64,000 nucleotides of DNA from Laetmonice hystrix (lineage: Eukaryota): positions 6,386,001 through 6,450,000 of the forward strand of contig OZ249441.1 in NCBI GenBank assembly GCA_965235115.1, read 5' to 3'. Made by a program: the position numbers and the translations under genes. Positions 44,658 to 64,000 of this stretch are shown piece after piece. The notes under the pieces are model-generated. The model did no database searches and had not been told where the DNA came from. It worked only from the letters and a program-made list of their open reading frames with translations. The stretch's first letter is position 1, and each line of letters opens with the position of its first letter.

Positions 44658-47600
44658 TCACCTGATCATCATGGCCCGTTTGATTGCACGTTCAATGTTC
44701 ATTCTGTCACTCACCTGAGTGACACCTAAAGATATCAGTTCATTCCGTCCCATCTGCACCAGGTGGCGCCCCGTCACGCTACCGCGCGCAAAGTTTGACT
44801 TCAGCCCACCCAGCTGGATACTCTCCAACCAATCACACACATCTGACGTCGACCAGCTCTCAATGGGTTTCTCCTGGAAGCCCTTGGGTTGGAGAACATG
44901 TCCGTAACTGGGGGCTGGTTCTGTGGGAGGAGTTTGGGGAGAGGCATCGAAGCCCATTGGAGGTGGAATAAAGTCATTAACGGGTGTCAACTCTTCATAA
45001 TGATGCTCTGGTTCACTGGTCATGTGAACGTACCCGATCGGAGCGCTCTCTGACGTGAAATCACCAAACCCTGGAGGGGGAGGAGGGGCAGCGTCACTCG
45101 GGTGCTGCACACTAGGTGGCGCACTAGTTAAGGAAGAAATATACGATTGTCTGGGGCTGGTATGCTGCACGTCCTGCTCGTTAGAGGACAATGTGGACAA
45201 TGTGGACAAAGAAGAAACCAAACTTGCGGTTTCTTCATGGTGCGACATGGTTGAATATTGTGAATTATCTATTCCGACTACAGCGTTCATCTCAGCCGAG
45301 TCAAAGAGCGGAGGTGGTGGAATGAAGTCAACCTCTACAATGTTTGTGGTGGATGGTTGTAGCTCCAACTCTTCGTGTCCGACCATTCCCAAGGCTGCCA
45401 CATCACCAGAGTCCACATCAATGGCTGAGTGTGAACCGTTTCTATGTGACAACTTATTGAGAATGGCGTACTCATGATGGGACACTTTGGGCGGGTCGGA
45501 GTTGATAATCCACCCGACTGTTTCATGGCCGTTTTTATTGTGGCCGTTGGTAATGATATCAAGGTCAGAACGTTTGTAATCCATGCCAAACTCCACGGGG
45601 GGCGGGGGTGGGACCATGGGAGGGGGCATGTCGTCACCGAACGCAGGCGGGGGTAACATGATAGGCAGATCAGTCTGAGGCTCACTGGCACGATACACTT
45701 TCTTATTCCCTGAAGGTTTCGGTGCTGTACTCGGAGACCTGCTCGAACCGTTTTTCATGTGGGACTCAAACATTTGGCTGCGCGCCAAAACTGACCGACC
45801 GTTGGGGTCCACTGGTTGCTGCTCAGTATTGGAAGAGTCTAATGTTGCCCCCTGGATTTCTACTGACAGCCGAGCCTCCAGTGTACCGTTTCTATTGTTA
45901 CCATTAGTGTTAACCCCCAGGTCAGCTACGTGCTGACCTGGCGCTGACCGCAACTGCTGCTGTTGTTGTGGTTGCTGTTGGTATCCATTGCCTACACTAC
46001 CATTCGCATTGCCACCCTTCCCATTTACAGGTCCGTCCTGGCTCTTCTGGCGAGCCAGAGCTTTCTGTGCTATAAAGGTGGCCAGGTCGCCCACTCCGGA
46101 CTGCTGACCTCCTGACCCCGGGGGCTGGCCGTTACCGGAATGATTTCCATGTGGACCTGCTCCCTGCACCTTTGTCACATTGTTATTGTCAGCATCATCC
46201 TCCGATTTCTTCTTCTTCTCCTCTTCATCTTTTTTAGTATCCTCCGACTTCTTTTTCCTTTCCAGGGTTTGCCCTGACTTTTTCATCAGCCATTCCTGGC
46301 GGGCCCGTTCGGCCATAGCCGTGAAGTTGGTCGGTTCCGGCGACTTAACCTCCGTGGTGGCCACACTGGACTCTTGAGACGGTCCCACACGGACCTCCGG
46401 CCCTGGAGTACCTACTGGCGACTTCACCTCCTCCGGAGGCCGCTGTGCCTTCTGCTCTCCTTCCATCTCTACCGCTTTGCTCTTAACGACTTCCGTAGTT
46501 GTTACTGCCGACTCAACCGTAGTTTTCGTTTTGGCTGGTGCTGTGACTGGCGAAGTTTTGGGTAACGGTTTGGGAGGATGGTTCCCCTGGTTAGCAAGTA
46601 GTGGCATGGCCTTGGCTGCGGAGCTCGGCGATGTCACTTCCTTGCCTTTGTTACTCGTATAGACAGTGGTCTGTAGTTTCTTGGCTCTCTGGACTCGGTT
46701 CTCGATACTGTCAGCCACTTCAGCCATGTTGGCTGTATCCACCATGTTCCTGCGGCGGGCCACTGCCGCCAAGATGGCGGCGTGTGTGTCCTCTCTCTGT
46801 CGGCTCTCCTCCAGAGACTTCTGTACCTGTGGCGGCACGTGGGACTTTTTCAGTGCTACTGGAGGCGTACTGTAGGACACAGGAGGTGGTGGTCCTGCAG
46901 GAGGAGGTGGAGGTGTCCTCCGGGCGGCGGGAGGTGGAGGAGGTGGGGGCGGTGTCGATGTCTTCACCTTCAGATCGTCCTCCTCTCGCCGTTTCTCGCG
47001 CGCCTCGGCTGCCATCTTGATTGCGTTGCCGAACTCTGAAATGGGTTTCTCTTCCTGTCTTGGACTTGTTAACTGTGGTGATGATGGGACTTTGTTGGAA
47101 TCCGAACTTGTATCTTTGGACCTCCAGTTCTCTCTGATAGAGCGCACTGAGGGCACTTCTGTCTCGACAGACGACCTGTCAGCTGCTCTCTCCTGGTGTT
47201 GACGGTTGACAACATCTGGAGTTTGGTGTCGAACTTCATACCTTGTGTTGGCCTCATACACTGTATCGTAGTCAGGCTCAGGCTCGTAGTACTGAGTTCG
47301 CGGTGGGGTCGGTTGTCTCGCTCGATCCCGTGTAGTTTCAGACGTCATCATAACTGAAGCATTGGGATGGTCACGCAAGAACCTCGCAGCATTCTCAGAC
47401 ACGTGACCGTCTGGTTGGTCTGAGTGCGGACTCCTGGCGGCCGTGGAAGATATCACATGAGGCCCTGACTGGTAGACCACATTCCGGTCATGTTGTGGTG
47501 ACGGTGTGGATACACTATACGGGGAGGAGGACCCAGAGGGAGGCAGCCGGGAGGGGCCCGCCCCTGGAGGCAGGGCGACCGGCTCCTTGTTCAGTTTGGC

Positions 47601-48478
47601 CACCACTCCCGGTCTGAAGCTGGATTCGTACGATGTCTGTCGTTTCATGGCCTGTTGTTCTTGTATTTGCTGTGATATATTGGCGTAGGTCGGAGAGGCA
47701 GTACTGATGGGTACCATTTCTCCGGCAGGGCTGTGATCTCCTGGCGGCTCCGGGGGAGGGTGACTTGGAGGGGGTGGGATCACGGAGGCGTATGGTGGAG
47801 ACGTAGGGGGCCGAGGTGGGGGTTCTCTCGGGTGTGGGGGTATAGCTGGTGGGGTACTGTAACCTCCACTGGACTCATTCCTAGCCTGGCTCGGTCCTGA
47901 CCGGCTCGGGCCTTTCATTGGGACCGCGTACAAGTTCTCGGGTGTGTCGGTGTTGGGAGTCAGGTGATATGCTCCAGTACGCTGGAAAACAGGCGAGTCA
48001 GCTGGAGAATCGTGAAGGTTGCGATCATACACAACCCTGCTGTCAGGCTGGTTACTATCATCAGATAACTCCACCCTCGTCACGTGATGAGCATAGATCC
48101 CTGGACTCTGAGGACTCACAAGGCTTGGAGTACTCCGGGCTCGGGACAGACTTGCCGAACCATTGGCCGGAACTCGTCCCTTCATTCGGGCTACCTTCTG
48201 TTCGGTAGGACTTGCGTATGTTTTTGGAGGAGGCGGGACGACGACAGGTTTGGGCTCTGGAGATGTACTGCCTGGAGGACTGCCTTGACGGGCGAAGATA
48301 TCCTCCAGCTCGAAGGCCGTCAGTCGCTTGCCGCTGTGACGGGACCTGATGGAGGCCGTCTTATTGTTAGGATCGACCCCCCTCCGGACTGCCTCGGCAT
48401 CCAGACCCGTGGTGGTCGGGGGATGTCCCACACTCCGAGTGTCATCATCGTACTGTGCTAACGTCTGGTCAAGTCGTT
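44658..48478 (-). CDS. SHANK: SHANK/ProSAP terminal exon: long Pro-rich disordered region plus C-terminal SAM domain
   Basis: Acceptor TTTCAG|AA at 48479/48478, phase 1; open for 3821 nt to the stop at 44658. Contains Shank-like TASIRSR..LTAFELEDIFARQ, several PPxxF motifs and a C-terminal SAM domain (PIESWSTSDVCDWLESIQL...RMNIERAIK). Joins the upstream exon as ...DSLAEL-E-RLDQTL. Confidence 0.93.
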
Positions 48479-55822: not shown

Positions 55823-56702
55823 ACCTAATCCCCACCCAAACATTGCCTCAACCTCATTCTACACCTGCTTGCCGTTTTTTTAGGCAGCCACCAGCCAAGC
55901 TTACAACAGGTCTATTGCATCCCTCCTAACCCACCAACCCTCCACTCCCAGCAAATATCGCTCTTTCTTTTAAACTACTCATCATACAGCTGCCATTGTT
56001 ATACGCACGGGGCTCGTTTTCCCCTTCATACAATGTGTGTGGACAGGGTCCCACAAAGTACCAACTCCCGGCGGACGCTAGATTCCTCCAGACACTGCCA
56101 CCTACGCAAGGTCAGCCCAAGGTCAGGGTCTCGTACTCGAGCGAGCACCACTTACAACGGTTGCTAAATTGTAACGAGCTTTTGGCAACTGAGCGTACAC
56201 AAAATGTATCGATGGTCAGTCCACTGATTATTAACCCCCCCCCCCCCAATGGCAACAGTCCCTTAATGCTGGCAAGCAAGTATAAAACCTTTCTGAAATA
56301 CGCGGGCGTTCGTAACGTTACCAAGGCAACACCTCTTCGTGTTTACCTCTTCGGATTTGGTTTTCCTTATGTTTTTTTTTGTTCCTCTCTTGTGTCAGTT
56401 TTAATTTGAAGCAGTGTTAGCAGAATTTTCCTGTTTGTTCGCCCATTTATCATTAGTTTTTATACTCTTTCTAAACTACACCACAGGCCCCAAACCCAGG
56501 TATCATTTTTACCATACCTATTTTTACACACCATTTTCAAAAGTGGTTGGTAAGAAAGCGGGACCAGTTGTGGATTCTATACTTATTTTTATACTTTCCT
56601 GTATAATCATGGAAATTCTAAACGTCAGTGTCAGACCTGGAAAACGTATCAGTAAATTCCAAACCTTTCCTGGATTTCCCTGCGGATGTTGGTAAAACTT
56701 AC

Positions 56703-56836
56703 CTCGAGTAGGAAGTCTCCCATCTTGAGGCCGGCCCTGTCAGCCATGCTGCCCTTGTCGACCCGGTCCAGGTACTGGAGGGCCGGGAAGGAGGGCGTGG
56801 GCGTGAAGTCAAGGGCCGACGACTGCTGCATCTGGG
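56703..56836 (-). CDS. SHANK: SHANK exon, central PDZ (AQMQQSSALDFTPTPSFPALQYLDRVDKGSMADRAGLKMGDFLLE)
   Basis: TTTTCAG| acceptor and |GTAAGT donor; 134 nt, phase 1-0. FTPTPxFPALQYL is the Shank PDZ signature. The GFGFVLRGAK exon was not found in the window. Confidence 0.93.
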
Positions 56837-56944
56837 CTGAAAACACACAACAGGCGCTAAGTATTGGGAATTCACAGAAATGTAGATACTAAATGCATAG
56901 CATCCACATGTATACAACCGTTACCCGCTTCATACGGGCTGGAA

Positions 56945-57215
56945 ACACAGTATTCAACAGCAGGAAAGTACTGGTAATACACAGTATCAACAGCAGGAAA
57001 GTACTGGTAATACACAGAATGATAGCGAATGGAGATAGAGGGAGATATATGAACCTATTGTAGTACACACTGCTGCATCTGGGCTGCAGACATACACAGT
57101 ATCAACAGCAGGAAAGTACTGGTAATACACAGAATAATAGCGAATGGAGATAGAGGGAGATATTATATCAACCTCTTGTACAGACTGCTGCATCTGGGTT
57201 GCAGACACACACAGT
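56945..57215 (-). repeat. About 115-125-bp imperfect duplications carrying copies of the PDZ-exon acceptor and first 15 exon nt
   Basis: CCCAGATGCAGCAGT recurs at 57069-57083 and 57184-57198; CACAGTATCAACAGCAGGAAAGTACTGGTAATACACAG is also repeated. Confidence 0.85.
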
Positions 57216-58202
57216 ATCAACAACAGGTAGGTATGGGTTATACACAGAAACAGTACGGAGACATAGGGAAATCTATACATCAACCTTAGGCTTGGAAACA
57301 CATCAACTCCATATCGTGACTGCTACGGGGATATATGTGTGGACTTGAAATACACATCAACTAAACCTTGTTGTTATCATCTTGACGTAACCCGATTCTT
57401 AAACAGACAACCACACACCAACCTCTACAATACTTCAAGTTACACAAATCACCAGCTCGATCACATTCAAACATGAGACTGGAAACTAGAAATCTTGTTA
57501 GAAAAGTTTGGAAATTCCTGGATCCGTGAAATATGTGCTCGTTCCACCGCAGGCCCTTAGAATCACAAGGCTCCATGCCGTTTCAATGTGGCCATCCCCA
57601 GACCCAGTTTTCTCCCACACTGGGATTTATTTACCCTGTGTACTGATGCCCCCACCCCTCTGTTTCTTATTGACTGTGTGTTAGGTTCACAGAGAGAGTT
57701 TTAAACGAGGACAGACAAACACAAAGTCCTACACCCGTCTACCGTCAGTCGAGGGACTACCTCCTCATACCGATCCTTGTCATCTCAACTCATTCATACA
57801 ATGACATTTATCAACACATCGCAGGGCGAACATGAGAAAGTACATTATGAATCTGATCTAAAACATACAGCACAAAATAATATCTCAAAACGTAGCTGTA
57901 TCCAGTCATACTTTAAAAGAAAATTCGTCTTGGAGACACACAGCGAACCAAAATCCCACAAAATATAAGATCAACACTAAAGTATTACCCAAAGAATTAC
58001 TATAAAGAAAATATAACATAACACTTAACGGAGAAACAAACAATACAAAAAATAACATAATGAATCAGTTACGAGCAGTTACCGGGGACCAACAGCTGAC
58101 GAGGGTTTTTTTCTGATAGCACAGCTACTTGCTTTAACCTCACTTCACATGGGAGTAAGGTCGCATAATATTTTAATAAAAGCCAGCCACAGGATCTTCT
58201 CC

Positions 58203-61200
58203 TCAGATCAGTGAGTCAGATCCTCGTGACCTTTCAACCTCTCCGGGTTTCCCTTCCTGTACCCCACCAGCAGTTGTTTGAGAAACATCAATAAACGCCT
58301 TACGGTCGTCCACCGTCTCTCCTTCTCTAGTTTCTCTGACGTCAGTCGGTACAGCAGTCGGTACAGCAGCTCGGGTACTGTCGGAGACTTGCGAAACGGC
58401 GACACCCAACTCTGGAGGCACGATGGTACTTTCTAAACCTGGGCTCACGTCGCCAAAACTGACTCGCTTCTTTTTGCTGGTTTTGAGAGGGTCCCCTGAG
58501 GGGGCGGCGGGGCGGATGGCACTCTTGAGTGATGCCGGGGGGTTAGGGCTGAGTGGTGGCGGGTATTTCCTGGGAGGAGGAGTTGGAGGAACTTTCCGGC
58601 GGGCATTTCTCTGGGTCAGTCCAGGACTGGTGATGGATACTGGTTTCCTGGGGGTGCCTTGGCCGGTGTTGGATACTGGTTTCCCGGGACTGGAGCTGCC
58701 TTGGCCGGTGATGGATACTGGTTTCCCGGGACTGGAGCTGCCTTGGCCGGTGATGGATACTGGTTTCCCGGGACTGGGGCGGCCTTGGTTGGTCAGGGGA
58801 CCTTTGATCGGACGGTAGTGGGTCTGTGATCTCTGTATGACGTAGTTAGACTCTGGCAGTGGGGAAAATATCACGTTATACGTCCCTACCCTTGCCTCTT
58901 GTTGCATGATCTCATCTGTATCACAGACTTTTTGACAGCATTCTGAGGTAAAATCACTGGGAACCACACTGGCTGAGTTATCACGCTTTTCTGGCGAAAT
59001 GTTCTCTTCCTGACCTGGAGATCTCACAAATCTCTCTTGTCCTTTATTCTCTTTTTTCTCCGTTTCATCTTGTACCATAACACACATCCAGCGCCCCCTG
59101 GTGTCAGATTCACCATCTCCAATCAGCGAGCACGGTTCATCGGATGGCTTTGTATGAGGCTCGCTGATTGGTTGTTGAGATGATGTCATCAGCTGTCTCT
59201 CGATGGCCTTCCTCACGCCCACCAGGGCGTCCTCATAACACTGGTCAACAAAAACAGACGCCGGCCTCCTGGCGGTCACCTCAGTAACTACCCCACTCCC
59301 CTCACTACTTGAGGCGACGTCAGAGTGTGAAAAACTCCTTGCTGTTTCACCACACGGCTCCAGGGCCCCCTTCACGGGGAGGTTTTTAGTACGACCTTCA
59401 CCTGTCTCATTGGCAACACGACCGTCCACCAAACTGACATCCCCCACTCGGTCACACGCTCCAGACTTTTCTTTCACGGTCTCCTTCTCCTCTGTAGGAT
59501 CATCTATCACAAGTCCTGCCTTATTTGTACTTGCTGTGTTCATCTTCCCACTGGAGTCTTTGATAACAGGTTCTGTACCGTGTGCGCCACAGCCACCCGT
59601 GTCAGTGATCGTTCTAAGTGGCTGATCGCTGGTTCTAACATCAGCCTCTCCAGGTAACTCTCGATCAGGGGCCGATAACTCCCCGTCAGGTCCGGAGAAC
59701 TTCCCCTCAGGCTCAGAGGACTCTCCCTCAGACCTTGATAACTCCCCGTCTGATCTGTATAACTCCCCCTCAGGCCTTGATAACTCACGATCGGGTCCAG
59801 TTAACACTATCTCAGGCGTTGATAACTCCCCCTCAGGCCTTGATAACTCCCCCTCAGGTTTTGATAACTCCCCCTCAGGCGTTGATAACTCCCCCCCAGG
59901 TTTTGATAACTCCCCCTCAGGTTTTAATAACTCCCCCTCAGGTTTTGATAACTGCCCCTCAGGTTTTGATAACTGCCCCTCAGGTTTTGATAACTGCCCC
60001 TCAGGTTTTGATAACTCCCCCTCAGGCTTTGATAACTGCCCTTCAGGTTTTGATAACTCCCCCTCCTGCCTTGCTAACGTCCCCTCCAGCCTTGATATAT
60101 CTCCCTCAGATCTCGATGACTTTCCCTCAATCACCAGTATCTCCTTAGTGCCACCATTCCCACTTTCTCTCATCTCACCTGCCGTGGCTACACACTCCCC
60201 ATCCTGACCCAGCCCTGAAACATGACCTCTCTCTTCACCCTTGCCTGGAGTGGTCCCTTTCACATCCCCCAGACCTCTACATCCATTCTCAGACCTGGAG
60301 TCGTCCTGACCACCTGTGGCTACCCTCCTTCCATCCGTCCCTACCTCTGTATGATCCTGGGGGTGTCGACTGGAGACGGGGGCCTTGGCAAGGTCACCTG
60401 GGACACTGTGTACTGACTGACCTTTGTCAGGGTTCTCCACCAAGAGAACCACTCCACATTCAGCACCCTCTGGGGCCTGCCTGACGCTCATCCACTGCGC
60501 TGACCCTCCTACTGCTAAACCCACCACTCCTATCACTTCATCCCTTTTTATAAGGTCATTCAGATCTATGTTCTGACCTTTTAGATGGATTATGTCGACC
60601 TTCTGACCTTCGACCTGACCTACATAATGTTTACTCTGACCTTGGTGACCTTCAGCGTCTGTTCTGGCCCCTAGTTTCTGACGTATCTGCCCTTCTGATC
60701 TGCCTATATCCTGACATATTTCTCCAGCTCCTTCTCCGATTACTGTACCTATCTCCCCTCCTATTCCCTGACCGATCTGTCCTGTTGTGGATCTTTCCCC
60801 TTGATTTGTCCCCACTTCTGTCCCGGGCCCTATTCCTTGACCTGTCCCCACTTCTCTCCCAGCGGGCCCTATTCCCTGACCTGTCCTCACTTCTGTCCCG
60901 GCGGGCCCTATTCCCTGACCTGTCCCCACTTCTGTCCCGGCGGGCCCTATTCCCTGACCTGTCGCCACTTCTCTCCCAGCGGGCCCTATTCCCTGACCTG
61001 TCGCCACTTCTGTCCCAGCCCCTATTCCCTGACCTGTCGCCACTTCTGTCCCGGCGGGCCCTATTCCCTGACCTGTCCCCACTTCTGCCCCAGCCCCTAT
61101 TCCCTGACCTGTCGCCACTTCTGTCCCGGCGGGCCCTATTCCCTGACCTGTCGCCACTTCTCTCCCAGCGGGCCCTATTCCCTGACCTGTCGCCACTTCT

Positions 61201-62855
61201 GTCCCAGCCCCTATTCCCTGACCTGTCGCCACTTCTGTCCCAGCCCCTATTCCCTGACCTGTCCCCACTTCTGTCCCAGCCCCTATTCCCTGACCTGTCC
61301 CCACTTCTGTCCCAGCCCCTATTCCCTGACCTGTCCCCACTTCTGTCCCGGCGGGCCCTATTCCCTGACCTGTCCCCACTTCTGTCCCAGCCCCTATTCC
61401 CTGACCTGTCCCCACTTCTGCCCCAGCCCCTATTCCCTGACCTGTCCCCTGGTCTATCCCCACGCCCTCCCTAGTCTCCCCGGCTAACTCCCCACCCTCA
61501 CACGTAACAGGCTGTGTGGGCTGCCCTTGTTTTTCTACCTTCTGGACCTGATGATCAACACCAACTTTTCTTACTCCCACACAGTCTGGACCATGAAGGT
61601 CCATAGTTTCTCTTTGTGCGATCTCACCTCTCCGAACCTCATCATCTTGTTTTTTACCCTCAGGTGATGTGTTTTGGTTGTTAAACACTTTACCTTCTGG
61701 GCTTTCAGGTTTTTCTACCTCACCCTCTATGTTATATTCTTCATGCTCTAATTCAACCTCTTGTGTCACTTCACTATCAAATCGTTGACGTTTGACACGT
61801 TCTTCTAACTCCCGGATCTTCTGCTCATCAATTTCGAAATCTTTTGACACCTGATCGTCAAGTTTTGTATCTGTTGCTACCTGAAGTAAAGAATCTAGTT
61901 TGACCCGGGGTTGGAGAGTTTGTCTCTCGCTTAGTTCAGTTATATAACTCTCAAGATGATCAGTTTGCCTGGACCTCATACCTTCATTCCTGACTACCTC
62001 ACACTGTGAACCGTTTCCCGGACCAGACCCTGTCTGACCCCCTTGATCCTCCTTCACACCCTGAGGCTCTCCTCCCTGTCCTGTCAGATTACCAGTGTCC
62101 GGGTTGGTTTCCTTAACCCCGTCACTATCTACTTTACGGTTTGTCTCACATCTAATAATAGGCCGTTCTGCTCGATCGGATTTGGTAAAACTTTCCTCCC
62201 TGATTACATTTAGAACCCGTCGTTTCAGTTCTACACTCTCGCTGACCTCTGACCCCGACCTTCCCTCCTCTCCTCCGGCTATAACAGTTACGTCATTATC
62301 AGCACACCGTGTTTGATCCACGGACAACTTTTTATCTCCTGACCCACTTATGTCCTCATCCACGACAGGTGCTGCCACGTGACCACTTTCATCACAAAGT
62401 ACAATATCTGGAGGAGCACCTGCCGCCTCCTCCTGCGTCTTACAATCTCCACCGTCCTCCTGTACGGACCGGGCGTCAGTAGTGACGTCACCGTCTCCTC
62501 CAGGGTGAGAGCATGATCTCCACAGATCCTTAAGGTGTATTTTTTTTCTCTCAGTTACCACTGTAATAGTATCTGAACCCGCAGTCCTCCAGACCTGCTC
62601 TCCCGCCCGGCCTACACTGGAGTACCTCCGGGGGCTCGCTGCCTGCACGGTATCCTCAGCCGGTCCTCCAGGCCGGAGGAGGCGGCAGTCCAGGCTGTTA
62701 GACCTCCGTGGGTGATACTCCCGGCTCCCGGCTCCTCCAGTGTCCGGCGGCCGGTCGGTCCTGATCTCCCGCCACTCCTCCCGTATGTTAGGGTCGCGGA
62801 CAATGTTAGTGCCCTCCTCCGTCTGTTCGCCTAGCTTCCCCTCCTGCTGACCCAT
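58203..62855 (-). CDS. 1550-aa uninterrupted low-complexity acidic/Gly-rich ORF nested in a SHANK intron (nested gene or alternative SHANK first exon)
   Basis: 4653-nt stop-free frame; ACCATGG start context with an in-frame TAG just upstream (62868-62870). Internal coding repeats keep the frame. ATTAAA at 58172-58177 on the minus strand. No recognisable folded domain. Confidence 0.75.
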   Translation of the reverse strand: MGQQEGKLGEQTEEGTNIVRDPNIREEWREIRTDRPPDTGGAGSREYHPRRSNSLDCRLLRPGGPAEDTVQAASPRRYSSVGRAGEQVWRTAGSDTITVVTERKKIHLKDLWRSCSHPGGDGDVTTDARSVQEDGGDCKTQEEAAGAPPDIVLCDESGHVAAPVVDEDISGSGDKKLSVDQTRCADNDVTVIAGGEEGRSGSEVSESVELKRRVLNVIREESFTKSDRAERPIIRCETNRKVDSDGVKETNPDTGNLTGQGGEPQGVKEDQGGQTGSGPGNGSQCEVVRNEGMRSRQTDHLESYITELSERQTLQPRVKLDSLLQVATDTKLDDQVSKDFEIDEQKIRELEERVKRQRFDSEVTQEVELEHEEYNIEGEVEKPESPEGKVFNNQNTSPEGKKQDDEVRRGEIAQRETMDLHGPDCVGVRKVGVDHQVQKVEKQGQPTQPVTCEGGELAGETREGVGIDQGTGQGIGAGAEVGTGQGIGAGTEVGTGQGIGPAGTEVGTGQGIGAGTEVGTGQGIGAGTEVGTGQGIGAGTEVATGQGIGAGTEVATGQGIGPAGREVATGQGIGPAGTEVATGQGIGAGAEVGTGQGIGPAGTEVATGQGIGAGTEVATGQGIGPAGREVATGQGIGPAGTEVGTGQGIGPAGTEVRTGQGIGPAGREVGTGQGIGPGTEVGTNQGERSTTGQIGQGIGGEIGTVIGEGAGEICQDIGRSEGQIRQKLGARTDAEGHQGQSKHYVGQVEGQKVDIIHLKGQNIDLNDLIKRDEVIGVVGLAVGGSAQWMSVRQAPEGAECGVVLLVENPDKGQSVHSVPGDLAKAPVSSRHPQDHTEVGTDGRRVATGGQDDSRSENGCRGLGDVKGTTPGKGEERGHVSGLGQDGECVATAGEMRESGNGGTKEILVIEGKSSRSEGDISRLEGTLARQEGELSKPEGQLSKPEGELSKPEGQLSKPEGQLSKPEGQLSKPEGELLKPEGELSKPGGELSTPEGELSKPEGELSRPEGELSTPEIVLTGPDRELSRPEGELYRSDGELSRSEGESSEPEGKFSGPDGELSAPDRELPGEADVRTSDQPLRTITDTGGCGAHGTEPVIKDSSGKMNTASTNKAGLVIDDPTEEKETVKEKSGACDRVGDVSLVDGRVANETGEGRTKNLPVKGALEPCGETARSFSHSDVASSSEGSGVVTEVTARRPASVFVDQCYEDALVGVRKAIERQLMTSSQQPISEPHTKPSDEPCSLIGDGESDTRGRWMCVMVQDETEKKENKGQERFVRSPGQEENISPEKRDNSASVVPSDFTSECCQKVCDTDEIMQQEARVGTYNVIFSPLPESNYVIQRSQTHYRPIKGPLTNQGRPSPGKPVSITGQGSSSPGKPVSITGQGSSSPGKPVSNTGQGTPRKPVSITSPGLTQRNARRKVPPTPPPRKYPPPLSPNPPASLKSAIRPAAPSGDPLKTSKKKRVSFGDVSPGLESTIVPPELGVAVSQVSDSTRAAVPTAVPTDVRETREGETVDDRKAFIDVSQTTAGGVQEGKPGEVERSRGSDSLI
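59735..60100 (-). repeat. 21-bp coding repeat (KPEGELS)n
   Basis: TTGATAACT(C/G)CCCCTCAGG(T/C) period 21 within the 1550-aa ORF. Confidence 0.93.
60785..61474 (-). repeat. 33/36-bp coding repeat (GTGQGIG[P]AG[T/R]EV)n, about 20 copies
   Basis: CCCTATTCCCTGACCTGTC(C/G)CCACTTCTG repeated within the 1550-aa ORF. Confidence 0.95.
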
Positions 62856-64000
62856 GGTCAGTCCCGCCTACTGGAGGACCCCGACCTCCACTCCTCCAGT
62901 AGTTTGTCCTCCGTTGGGTGTCGCCGGTTTGTGTGGCCGTGCCTGCCCGGAGAGGGAGGGATTGCGGAGCGTACAGACAGCCCTCCCTGTGTTGGCCGCG
63001 GCCCGACCACTTGTGTCTGGGGACGGTCCGGGCCCCAGCCTCCCGCTCCACTGGCTGCGGGAGGGGGCGGGGGGGGGGGGCGGGGGCGGGGGTCGCTGAG
63101 ACTGGATCCCGTGGCTATCAACAAAAACACCCTAACTCCACTCCCAGCCAGCCCACTCAGAGAACACAGACTTTTTCCTGGCCTGATCCTTGACTGGCTG
63201 CCAGGGATGGGATGCCCCCGGGTAGACAGGAGCCTAGGGTTCTCCCTCAACCCCCTTCCCCACCCCCTTCCTATCTCAACCACCCCTCAGTGACGACCTC
63301 CCGTCCTGTGTTTATTATGCCTCATCAGGTGGCAGTGGTCATGCCACACGCTTCCCGTCACGGTTTTAAACACCCTCACTGTGATCAGCTGTCACTGTCA
63401 CCGTTAGAGTTAAAACTCAAGGGAGGGGGGTTCTCCCTTTACCCCACTTATCCACCCCTCCCCCGCCTAACCACCTGGGTGGGGCCCAATCCAATGTTTG
63501 GCTAACCTATTTGTCTATAGGGAGAATGGCCGGGGTGTTTTTATTGGGGGGAAATGGGAGAAATTGGCATCTGGTGGTGAAAACCATACGTGAGCTGGGG
63601 AAGCGATGATAAACTCTACCGACCCACGTACTTAACAAAAAGCGGGTCTCCCTAACCGCGGACCCAGTCCCATTACGCTCTCCATGCAGTGTCACTAACA
63701 GGGAAATGACATGTCATCGTGTTTAGTCTGGCGTTTCCAGGGCCACTAAGATAACTCGCCGTCAATTGTCTTCCGCGGTTCATTTTGACTGCTGGTTGAT
63801 TCAGTAACCTGATCACCTTTATTTCCCGCCATAAAGGGACGGAACTTTTTTCTGAGTTGATCGTGTTACAGCTATACAGGGTGTCCCAAAAAAATGCCAA
63901 GCTGGGCAACCTCAGAACCTATGTTCCCCCATATCCTGATAGGGAATCTTCTTCCATCAAAGATCGTCTTTAATTCATCAAAATCAGTCAAGCAAACCAA

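What the first reader, a model, noticed from the sequence alone, without database searches (positions are those of the whole stretch)
58203..62855. 1550-aa intronless ORF inside the intron that splits the SHANK PDZ, with a latent in-frame donor into SHANK
Seen: same strand as SHANK, upstream of the phase-1 PDZ exon at 56836, with the GFGF-containing exon not in the window. It has an ideal ACCATGG start, an upstream in-frame TAG and a GC-rich region at 62860-63100. Near its end, GAC C|GTAAGG (58304/58303) is a phase-1 donor. Splicing it to 56836 would fuse 1517 novel residues in frame to QMQQSSALDFTPTP..., giving a SHANK isoform with no ANK/SH3 and a PDZ lacking its carboxylate-binding loop. 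Known: vertebrate SHANKs use intragenic promoters; I know of no giant N-terminal exon like this. Inference: either a nested same-strand gene (ATTAAA at 58172) or a new SHANK isoform class.
Basis: partly seen in the sequence, partly recalled or inferred. Interest (0 to 1): 0.72.

Follow-up and report, generated by a model that had tools for sequence, protein, structure and literature searches.

The report
Orphan gene nested in SHANK intron
The 1550-codon open frame is a real, transcribed gene that sits in the same SHANK intron in one related species, encodes a repeat-rich and probably disordered protein, and shows no sign of being spliced into SHANK, so it is a nested gene rather than a new SHANK isoform.

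Summary
A 1550-codon frame lies at 58203-62855 (-), with ACCATGG, an in-frame TAG 15 nt upstream, GC-rich 5' flank and ATTAAA 25 nt after the stop. It has no stops, against 54-117 in the other frames.

It lies in the 22-kb intron that splits the SHANK PDZ. One RNA-derived contig set (X4) joins exon 56836 directly to the GFGF exon. X4 covers the ORF but not the flanking intron, and shows no joint from the ORF to SHANK.

The "latent in-frame donor" is chance: the ORF has 15 GTRAG sites, 10 in phase 1, as in codon shuffles.

Two protein libraries (5.8 and 1.84 billion sequences) hold one homolog. It is a 1519-aa ORF in a related, probably annelid, assembly. It has the same strand and the same place upstream of the PDZ exon and SHANK last exon. 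Identity is 33-43%, against 73% for SHANK.

Paralvinella has the same intron without the ORF.

The protein has no Pfam domain or paralog, is 27% tandem repeats and folds at low confidence. Conserved motifs are MGQxEGKL (myristoylation type), RRSNSLDCRLLRPGGP, a PxxPxR site and KKKRVSFGD (RVxF, PP1 docking).

Verdict: a lineage-restricted nested gene. The SHANK fusion is unsupported and the 3' end is unmapped.

The parts
58203..62855 (-). Single-exon coding frame of 1550 codons plus stop: the nested gene's CDS
   Evidence: 0 stops against 54-117 in other frames. The homolog P0001 aligns at both ends. RNA contigs of X4 lie on 58444-62659.
62852..62858 (-). Start context ACCATGG, with an in-frame TAG at 62870-62868 just upstream
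   Evidence: The relative's similarity begins exactly at its Met79, MGQREGKL.
62860..63100 (-). GC-rich 5' flank with a C-rich tract at 63059-63092: putative promoter and 5' UTR (inferred, not mapped)
   Evidence: CpG observed/expected is only 0.45-0.79, so it is not a strong CpG island.
62832..62855 (-). MGQQEGKL, a Gly2 N-terminus of N-myristoylation type that is conserved in the relative
   Evidence: The fit to the PROSITE-type pattern G-{EDRKHPFYW}-x(2)-[STAGCN]-{P} comes from memory of that pattern.
62661..62708 (-). RRSNSLDCRLLRPGGP, the longest invariant block (16 residues, 50-65); it holds a basophilic-kinase-type site
60807..61449 (-). Array of 36/39-nt units, about 17 copies, coding G-T-G-Q-G-I-G-(P)-A-G-T-E-V repeats
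   Evidence: Only this array and the next one hit other loci in the genome.
59674..60109 (-). Array of 21-nt units, about 19 copies, coding E-L-S-K-P-E-G repeats; the relative has K/E/P/L-rich decamer repeats at the same relative place
58629..58788 (-). Array of 42-nt units, 4 copies, coding GKPVSITGQGSSSP repeats
59181..59258 (-). Conserved block PASVFVDQxYEDxLVGVRxAIERQLM; it holds the only helix predicted in the C-terminal 400 residues
   Evidence: and (helix at segment residues 56-75, pLDDT 54-64).
58557..58598 (-). RRKVPPTPPPRKYPP, a conserved proline-rich site that fits SH3-ligand patterns (PxxPxR and RxxPxxP)
   Evidence: and (local pLDDT 65-71).
58449..58475 (-). KKKRVSFGD, an invariant block holding the protein's only RVxF match (a PP1 docking motif with a phosphorylatable Ser)
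   Evidence: The consensus [K/R]x(0-1)[V/I]x[F/W] is taken from PMC6406801.
58298..58304 (-).
   Evidence: one of 10 phase-1 GTRAG sites, as chance expects. No joint.
58172..58177 (-). ATTAAA, 25 nt after the stop: candidate poly(A) signal (inferred)
   Evidence: Not covered by X4 contigs.
56703..56836 (-). Host SHANK PDZ exon (phase 1), joined in RNA to the GFGF exon about 22 kb upstream
   Evidence: the loose end.

Best explanation
This is an independent, single-coding-exon, protein-coding gene nested on the sense strand in the roughly 22-kb intron that splits the PDZ domain of SHANK. The host is a lophotrochozoan, probably an annelid.

Shown: SHANK pre-mRNA is spliced across the gene, from the GFGF exon to exon 56836.

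Inferred: the gene is transcribed from its own GC-rich 5' flank and ends at the ATTAAA 25 nt after its stop.

Its product is a fast-evolving protein that is probably mostly disordered. Three tandem-repeat arrays make up about 27% of it.

Inferred from short conserved motifs only: it most likely acts as a membrane-anchored scaffold. The supporting motifs are:
- an N-terminal Gly2 myristoylation-type signal;
- basophilic-kinase sites (RRSNS, RRYSS);
- a proline-rich SH3-ligand site;
- one RVSF motif that would dock protein phosphatase 1 and be switched off when its serine is phosphorylated.

As a same-strand nested unit, its promoter and poly(A) site could also interfere with SHANK transcription. 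That is speculation.
For: Coding and real:
- 0 stops in 1550 codons, against 54-117 in other frames.
- The only indel seen inside the ORF among the sample's alleles is 3 nt. The flanks carry indels of 1, 1, 12 and +1 nt.
- Listed SNPs are 11 synonymous and 18 not, against 24% synonymous at random. This is weak and not significant.

Transcribed apart from the host:
- X4 contains a spliced GFGF-to-56836 contig, so it is RNA-derived.
- X4 has zero depth on intron 56860-58259 but lies on 58444-62659.
- Its word depth there is 10-34, against 6.7 on the SHANK exon.
- It shows no joint within the stretch.

Conserved:
- P0001 (1519 aa) matches at E 1.8e-38. Identity is 33% overall and 41-43% in the N- and C-terminal parts.
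- Similarity starts at its Met79.

Synteny in the relative: ORF, then PDZ-hitting ORFs 1.7-2.3 kb on, then the SHANK last exon 11.06 kb on, all on one strand. Here the distances are 1.37 and 9.77 kb.

Not a repeat or mobile element:
- Single copy except for its repeat arrays.
- No Pfam domain.
- No flanking direct or inverted repeats.

Disorder and motifs:
- Mean pLDDT is 39.5 and 36.7.
- The longest invariant blocks are the motifs named above.
- There is a single RVxF match and it is invariant.
Against: - RNA evidence is one contig set from one sample. Contigs cannot show strand, starts or ends.
- X4 has no contig on 58060-58443, the last 80 codons and the 3' UTR, so the 3' end is unmapped. 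The 5' end lay outside the stretch laid.
- Only two sequences exist, so conservation of motifs is thin.
- The low pLDDT comes from 2-sequence alignments, which often give poor models whatever the fold.
- An RVxF match would occur by chance in a protein of this make-up about 0.4 times (my estimate frequencies).
- No binding was tested.
Confidence: 0.75

Rival explanations
1. The ORF is an alternative first exon of SHANK. Transcripts from the intragenic promoter use the phase-1 donor at 58304 and join exon 56836. That would give a SHANK isoform with a 1517-residue N-terminus and half a PDZ.
For: The phases fit. The residues Arg-Lys at the donor (CGT AAG) are also Arg-Lys in the relative. X4 has no contig on 58060-58443, so the end of the ORF is not seen as RNA. 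Vertebrate SHANK genes are known to use intragenic promoters (general knowledge).
Against: X4 shows no joint from any ORF position to 56836. The contig across 56836 runs unbranched into the GFGF exon, although ORF word depth exceeds that of the exon. Ten phase-1 GTRAG sites are expected by chance. Similarity to the relative continues after the donor (F, I/L, V/I-S) and both frames stop 25-33 codons later. No fused protein turned up in 1.84 billion representatives.
Confidence: 0.07
2. The gene is nested and independent but not intronless. Its mRNA leaves the long frame near 58449 (GAC|GTGAGC, phase 0) for a downstream exon, so the last 81 codons are not part of the protein.
For: X4 contig 25 (depth 34, the highest on the ORF) stops at 58444 and nothing follows down to 58060. 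A GTGAG lies at 58448-58444.
Against: The contig shows no loose end there. Similarity to the relative is above average just after this point, about 43% over 30 residues. The relative has Ile there, so it has no GT at that site. X4 has other holes inside the ORF, and the tool warns that holes prove nothing. The 29-mer at this point is unique in the genome.
Confidence: 0.1
3. The frame is a transcribed but untranslated or functionless stretch: intronic RNA, an alternative SHANK 3' end, or a recently decayed retrocopy that is open by accident.
For: No domain, one homolog only, a weak polymorphism signal and no protein-level data.
Against: A 1550-codon open frame is kept at similar length in two species that differ at about two thirds of its residues, with invariant blocks of 8-16 residues. 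The flanking intron is not in the RNA. There is no parent copy in the genome.
Confidence: 0.05

Closest known systems
Host/nested gene pairs of animals (a protein-coding gene lying wholly in an intron of another gene)
   Same: The gene lies entirely in one long host intron and has its own start, stop and candidate poly(A) signal. The host is spliced across it. In mouse and human such pairs involve over a tenth of genes, and same and opposite orientations are about equally common (PMC11694760).
   Different: The host is SHANK and the intron cuts the PDZ domain. The nested gene is unusually long for a single-exon orphan and has no recognisable family. I found no report of a gene nested in a SHANK intron.
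Intragenic-promoter isoforms of vertebrate SHANK genes
   Same: There is a GC-rich putative promoter inside the gene, on the same strand and upstream of PDZ-coding exons.
   Different: Those isoforms splice into downstream SHANK exons. Here no such junction is seen, and the long exon carries its own stop.
RVxF-type PP1-interacting proteins (disordered regulatory subunits such as KNL1, Repo-Man and PNUTS)
   Same: The region is disordered and holds a basic stretch plus RVSF. The motif serine could serve as a phospho-switch, as described for RVxF motifs phosphorylated by Aurora B (PMC6406801).
   Different: There is no sequence homology to any of them, no SILK or MyPhoNE match, and binding is untested. 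The resemblance is one short motif.
Taxonomically restricted (orphan) genes rich in tandem repeats
   Same: The gene has one detectable homolog, evolves fast, is of low complexity, and its repeat arrays differ between the two species.
   Different: At 1550 aa it is far longer than typical young genes. Sampling is poor, because only one close relative is in the libraries, so its true range is unknown.

Membership tests
Nested intronic protein-coding gene (same strand as host) | Lies wholly within one intron of the host | tested here: met
   An RNA contig joins 56836 to the GFGF exon at window-equivalent 78882-78911. The ORF at 58203-62855 lies between them.
Nested intronic protein-coding gene (same strand as host) | Own open reading frame under coding constraint | tested here: met
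   0 stops in 1550 codons. A homolog of like length has invariant blocks. The only in-ORF indel is 3 nt.
Nested intronic protein-coding gene (same strand as host) | Transcribed as its own unit (own 5' and 3' ends) | tested here: inconclusive
   RNA contigs lie on the ORF and not on the flanking intron, at higher word depth than the host exon. The ends were not mapped and 58060-58443 is uncovered.
Nested intronic protein-coding gene (same strand as host) | Arrangement conserved in a relative | tested here: met
   Same contig, strand and order, and similar spacing, in ERZ26222911. Absent from the same intron of Paralvinella.
SHANK isoform with an alternative first exon | Splice junction from the exon into a downstream SHANK exon | tested here: not met
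   No X4 joint on 56660-62659. The contig across 56836 runs unbranched to the GFGF exon. This is one sample only.
SHANK isoform with an alternative first exon | A donor site that stands out from chance | tested here: not met
   15 GTRAG sites, 10 in phase 1, against 15.1 and 10.0 in codon shuffles.
SHANK isoform with an alternative first exon | Coding conservation ends at the donor | tested here: inconclusive
   RKxF..[VI]S is shared across the site, and both frames end soon after it. There are only two sequences.
RVxF-type PP1-interacting protein | Match to [K/R]x(0-1)[V/I]x[F/W] in a disordered stretch | tested here: met
   KRVSF at residues 1463-1467 is the only match. pLDDT is under 50 there. 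The consensus is from PMC6406801.
RVxF-type PP1-interacting protein | Motif conserved among orthologs | tested here: met
   KKKRVSFGD is invariant in the one ortholog available.
RVxF-type PP1-interacting protein | Physical binding to the PP1 catalytic subunit | not testable with these tools
   The PP1 genes of this genome are split into short exons, so no unaltered full-length PP1 could be handed to complex prediction.
Retrocopy or transposon-derived ORF | A parent gene or further copies; element domains; terminal repeats | tested here: not met
   Only the repeat arrays hit elsewhere in the genome. No Pfam domain. No flanking direct or inverted repeats.

The most novel reading that the evidence does not exclude
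A long gene arose or settled inside the PDZ-splitting intron of SHANK in one spiralian lineage and became functionally tied to its host. The tie would be either a myristoylated PP1/SH3-ligand scaffold that acts on the same postsynaptic complex, or occasional splicing into exon 56836 or transcriptional interference that tunes SHANK isoforms.
Probability: 0.1. Interest if true: 0.6.

Novelty: new member of a known kind. Interest (0 to 1): 0.3.

Why it matters
It removes a tempting but unsupported claim of a giant new SHANK isoform with a crippled PDZ. What replaces it is a concrete, unannotated gene: a 1550-residue protein with no known family, conserved in place in at least two species.

For genome annotation of spiralians it warns that gene callers may fuse or miss such single-exon genes inside long introns.

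For work on new genes it is a rare long case with a datable host intron. The intron is present in Paralvinella without the gene.

The motif-based idea of a PP1/SH3 scaffold is cheap to test.

Tried and rejected
- Pfam on the whole protein: nothing.
- Exact look-up of the protein in the 15-billion collection: absent.
- N-terminal piece searched alone for fragments: nothing.
- C-terminal profile against 1.84 billion representatives: only P0001 and one unrelated repeat protein, P0002.
- ESM Atlas by features, on the N- and C-terminal parts: no usable hit.
- PDB by sequence, with the N-terminal 25 residues and profile A1: nothing.
- Structure prediction of both conserved parts: mean pLDDT 37-40. 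No fold search was run, because low-confidence models give meaningless matches.
- Codon-usage correlation with the SHANK last exon: uninformative, because a shifted frame scores as high.
- The class I PDZ-ligand look of the C-terminus (-DSLI): rejected as not conserved.
- Rfam on 56000-64000: nothing.
- Search for terminal repeats: only internal arrays.
- A recollection that the N-terminus resembles the myristoylated cap of c-Abl 1b: could not be verified with the tools, so it is not used.

Full report
**The observation**

The minus strand carries an ATG-to-stop frame at 58203-62855 of 1550 codons. It has no internal stop. The two other sense frames have 91 and 117 stops, and the three antisense frames have 54-69. 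At the lowest of these densities, an open run this long has a chance of roughly 1e-24 (my arithmetic).

The start sits in ACCATGG, with an in-frame TAG five codons upstream. The 5' flank is GC-rich, at 0.61-0.63, and holds a C-rich tract at 63059-63092. ATTAAA lies 25 nt after the stop. GACC|GTAAGG at 58304|58303 is a phase-1 donor-like site.

**Where it lies**

The window is G000:C6:6386001-6450000 of a 627-Mb assembly. SHANK runs on the minus strand. Its last exon, which includes the SAM domain, is at 44658-48431. A PDZ exon is at 56703-56836.

Four runs of one sample hold the stretch. Three behave as DNA and cover everything. The fourth, X4, has a contig on exon 56703-56836 whose continuation past the acceptor reads GFGFVLRGA(K) when reverse-complemented. 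That 30-mer occurs once in the genome, at C6:6464882-6464911 (-), which is window-equivalent 78882-78911.

X4 is therefore RNA-derived, and SHANK is spliced from the GFGF exon to 56836 across an intron of about 22 kb. The ORF sits in the last quarter of that intron, 1.37 kb upstream of the acceptor. The rest of the intron is mostly minisatellites.

**Transcription, and the fusion idea**

X4 has zero depth on 56860-58259, which is intron and 3' flank. Its contigs do lie on 58444-62659, at word depths of 10-34. The SHANK exon stands at 6.7. The tool warns that depth is a poor measure, so I read this only as showing that the ORF RNA is not SHANK pre-mRNA.

Both 58304 and 56836 lay on the 6-kb stretch. 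No X4 joint was reported, and the contig across 56836 runs unbranched into the GFGF exon. The only joint in the table is a 74-nt deletion allele in the DNA runs.

The donor itself carries no weight. The ORF has 15 GTRAG sites, 10 in phase 1. Codon shuffles give 15.1 and 10.0. Phase 2 is impossible in an open frame, because it would create a stop.

**What remains open on the RNA**

X4 has no contig on 58060-58443, so the last 80 codons and the 3' UTR are not seen as RNA. Contig 25 stops at 58444, next to a GAC|GTGAGC site. Four points argue against reading this as a splice:
- the contig has no loose end there;
- protein similarity to the relative continues past that point;
- the relative has Ile there, so it has no GT at that site;
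- X4 has other holes inside the ORF.

I list this as unexplained and give a multi-exon model 0.1.

**Relatives**

The N-terminal 460 residues found one protein among 5.8 billion. This is P0001, a 1519-aa ORF from ENA assembly ERZ26222911, at E 1.8e-38. BLASTP aligns both ends: 33% identity over residues 1-461 and 31% over 1070-1539. MAFFT gives 43% and 41% for the conserved N- and C-terminal parts.

Similarity begins at Met79 of P0001 (MGQREGKL). The 78 residues before it are likely an artefact of prokaryote-style ORF calling.

A profile of the C-terminal part, run against 1.84 billion representatives with no length limit, found nothing else related. The N-terminal piece alone found no fragments. 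The exact protein is not in the collection.

**Synteny**

On the relative's 646-kb contig, the ORF is followed on the same strand by two short ORFs with weak PDZ_6 hits, 1.7-2.3 kb downstream. The SHANK last exon P0003 follows 11.06 kb downstream. This spacing comes from matching the two gene lists with an offset of 15622. In the window the corresponding distances are 1.37 kb and 9.77 kb.

P0003 is 73% identical to the window's last exon. The nested protein therefore evolves much faster than its host's own disordered tail.

The named SHANK hits are Paralvinella palmiformis and Lingula anatina. This places the window in Lophotrochozoa, probably Annelida.

Paralvinella has the same intron position, at 11588-21127 of L015, between ...GFGFVLRGAK and SSTLDF... 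That intron holds no ORF of 90 aa or more on the sense strand and gives no tblastn hit to either protein.

The gene is thus seen in two species and is absent from a more distant annelid. With such fast divergence, and only one close relative in the libraries, its true range is unknown.

**What the protein is**

- It has no Pfam domain.
- It has no paralog. Only the two larger repeat arrays hit other loci.
- It has no terminal repeats and no Rfam hit, so nothing suggests a mobile element or a retrocopy with a surviving parent.
- Three in-frame arrays (36/39 nt x 17, 21 nt x 19 and 42 nt x 4) make up about 27% of the length.
- The relative has different K/E/P/L-rich repeats at the matching place.
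- Composition is G 15.5%, E 10.5% and few aromatics.
- AlphaFold models of both conserved parts have mean pLDDT 39.5 and 36.7, with a few isolated helices. This fits disorder, but 2-row alignments also give poor models on their own.
- Polymorphism in the sample is weakly skewed to synonymous change: 11 of 29, against 24% at random. The only indel inside the ORF is 3 nt, while those in the flanks are 1, 1, 12 and +1 nt.

**Likely mechanism (inferred)**

The longest invariant blocks are:
- RRSNSLDCRLLRPGGP
- LNVIREESFTKSD
- PRRYSSVG
- PASVFVDQ
- TRGRWMCVM
- PPTPPPR
- LKSAIRP
- KKKRVSFGD

The N-terminus MGQxEGKL fits the myristoylation pattern as I recall it. KRVSF is the protein's only match to the RVxF consensus [K/R]x(0-1)[V/I]x[F/W]. 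That motif is present in about 70% of PP1-interacting proteins, and its phosphorylation by Aurora B abrogates PP1 binding (PMC6406801). RRKVPPTPPPRK fits SH3-ligand patterns.

I therefore propose a membrane-anchored, disordered scaffold that docks PP1 and an SH3 protein and is regulated by basophilic kinases. None of this is tested. By my estimate, an RVxF match would arise by chance about 0.4 times in such a protein, so the weight rests on its invariance in one ortholog. The -DSLI end looks like a PDZ ligand but is not conserved.

**Comparison and verdict**

Nested genes in long introns are common in animals, and same-strand pairs are about as frequent as opposite ones (PMC11694760). I found no report of one in a SHANK intron.

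This is a new member of a known kind. It is an unannotated, lineage-restricted, single-exon gene nested in SHANK. It is not a new class of SHANK isoform. Confidence in the nested-gene reading is 0.75, and interest is 0.3.

Noticed in passing
window 56945-57249: A 115-nt unit (2.4 copies, with a 33-nt sub-repeat) duplicates the 3' splice site and the first ~17 nt of SHANK exon 56836 (..gcag|cccagatgcagcagt..). This puts at least two decoy acceptors upstream of the real one. DNA runs X2 and X3 carry a 74-nt deletion allele at 57266-57341, beside the array.
   Followed up: partly
L010 1840-3463 and L011 1167-2380 (window-equivalent about 65840-67463 and 75167-76380): The rest of the PDZ-splitting intron holds long minisatellite arrays. 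They give spurious open frames of 160-500 aa, in several frames and in L010 on both strands. They are not genes.
   Followed up: no
window 58060-58443: The RNA contig set X4 has no contig here, on the last 80 codons and the 3' UTR of the nested gene. The adjoining contig (58444-58699) has the highest word depth on the ORF and ends beside a GTGAG.
   Followed up: partly
L015 1-33440 (Paralvinella palmiformis JAODUP010000087.1): The public annotation splits SHANK into two gene models: an ANK-repeat part, and a 1755-aa 'hypothetical protein' holding the PDZ and SAM parts.
   Followed up: no
window 62390-62413 (residues 148-155, PPDIVLCDE): A block conserved in the relative (P-x-IVLCDE) loosely resembles a calcineurin PxIxIT docking site. 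The motif is recalled from memory and was not tested.
   Followed up: no
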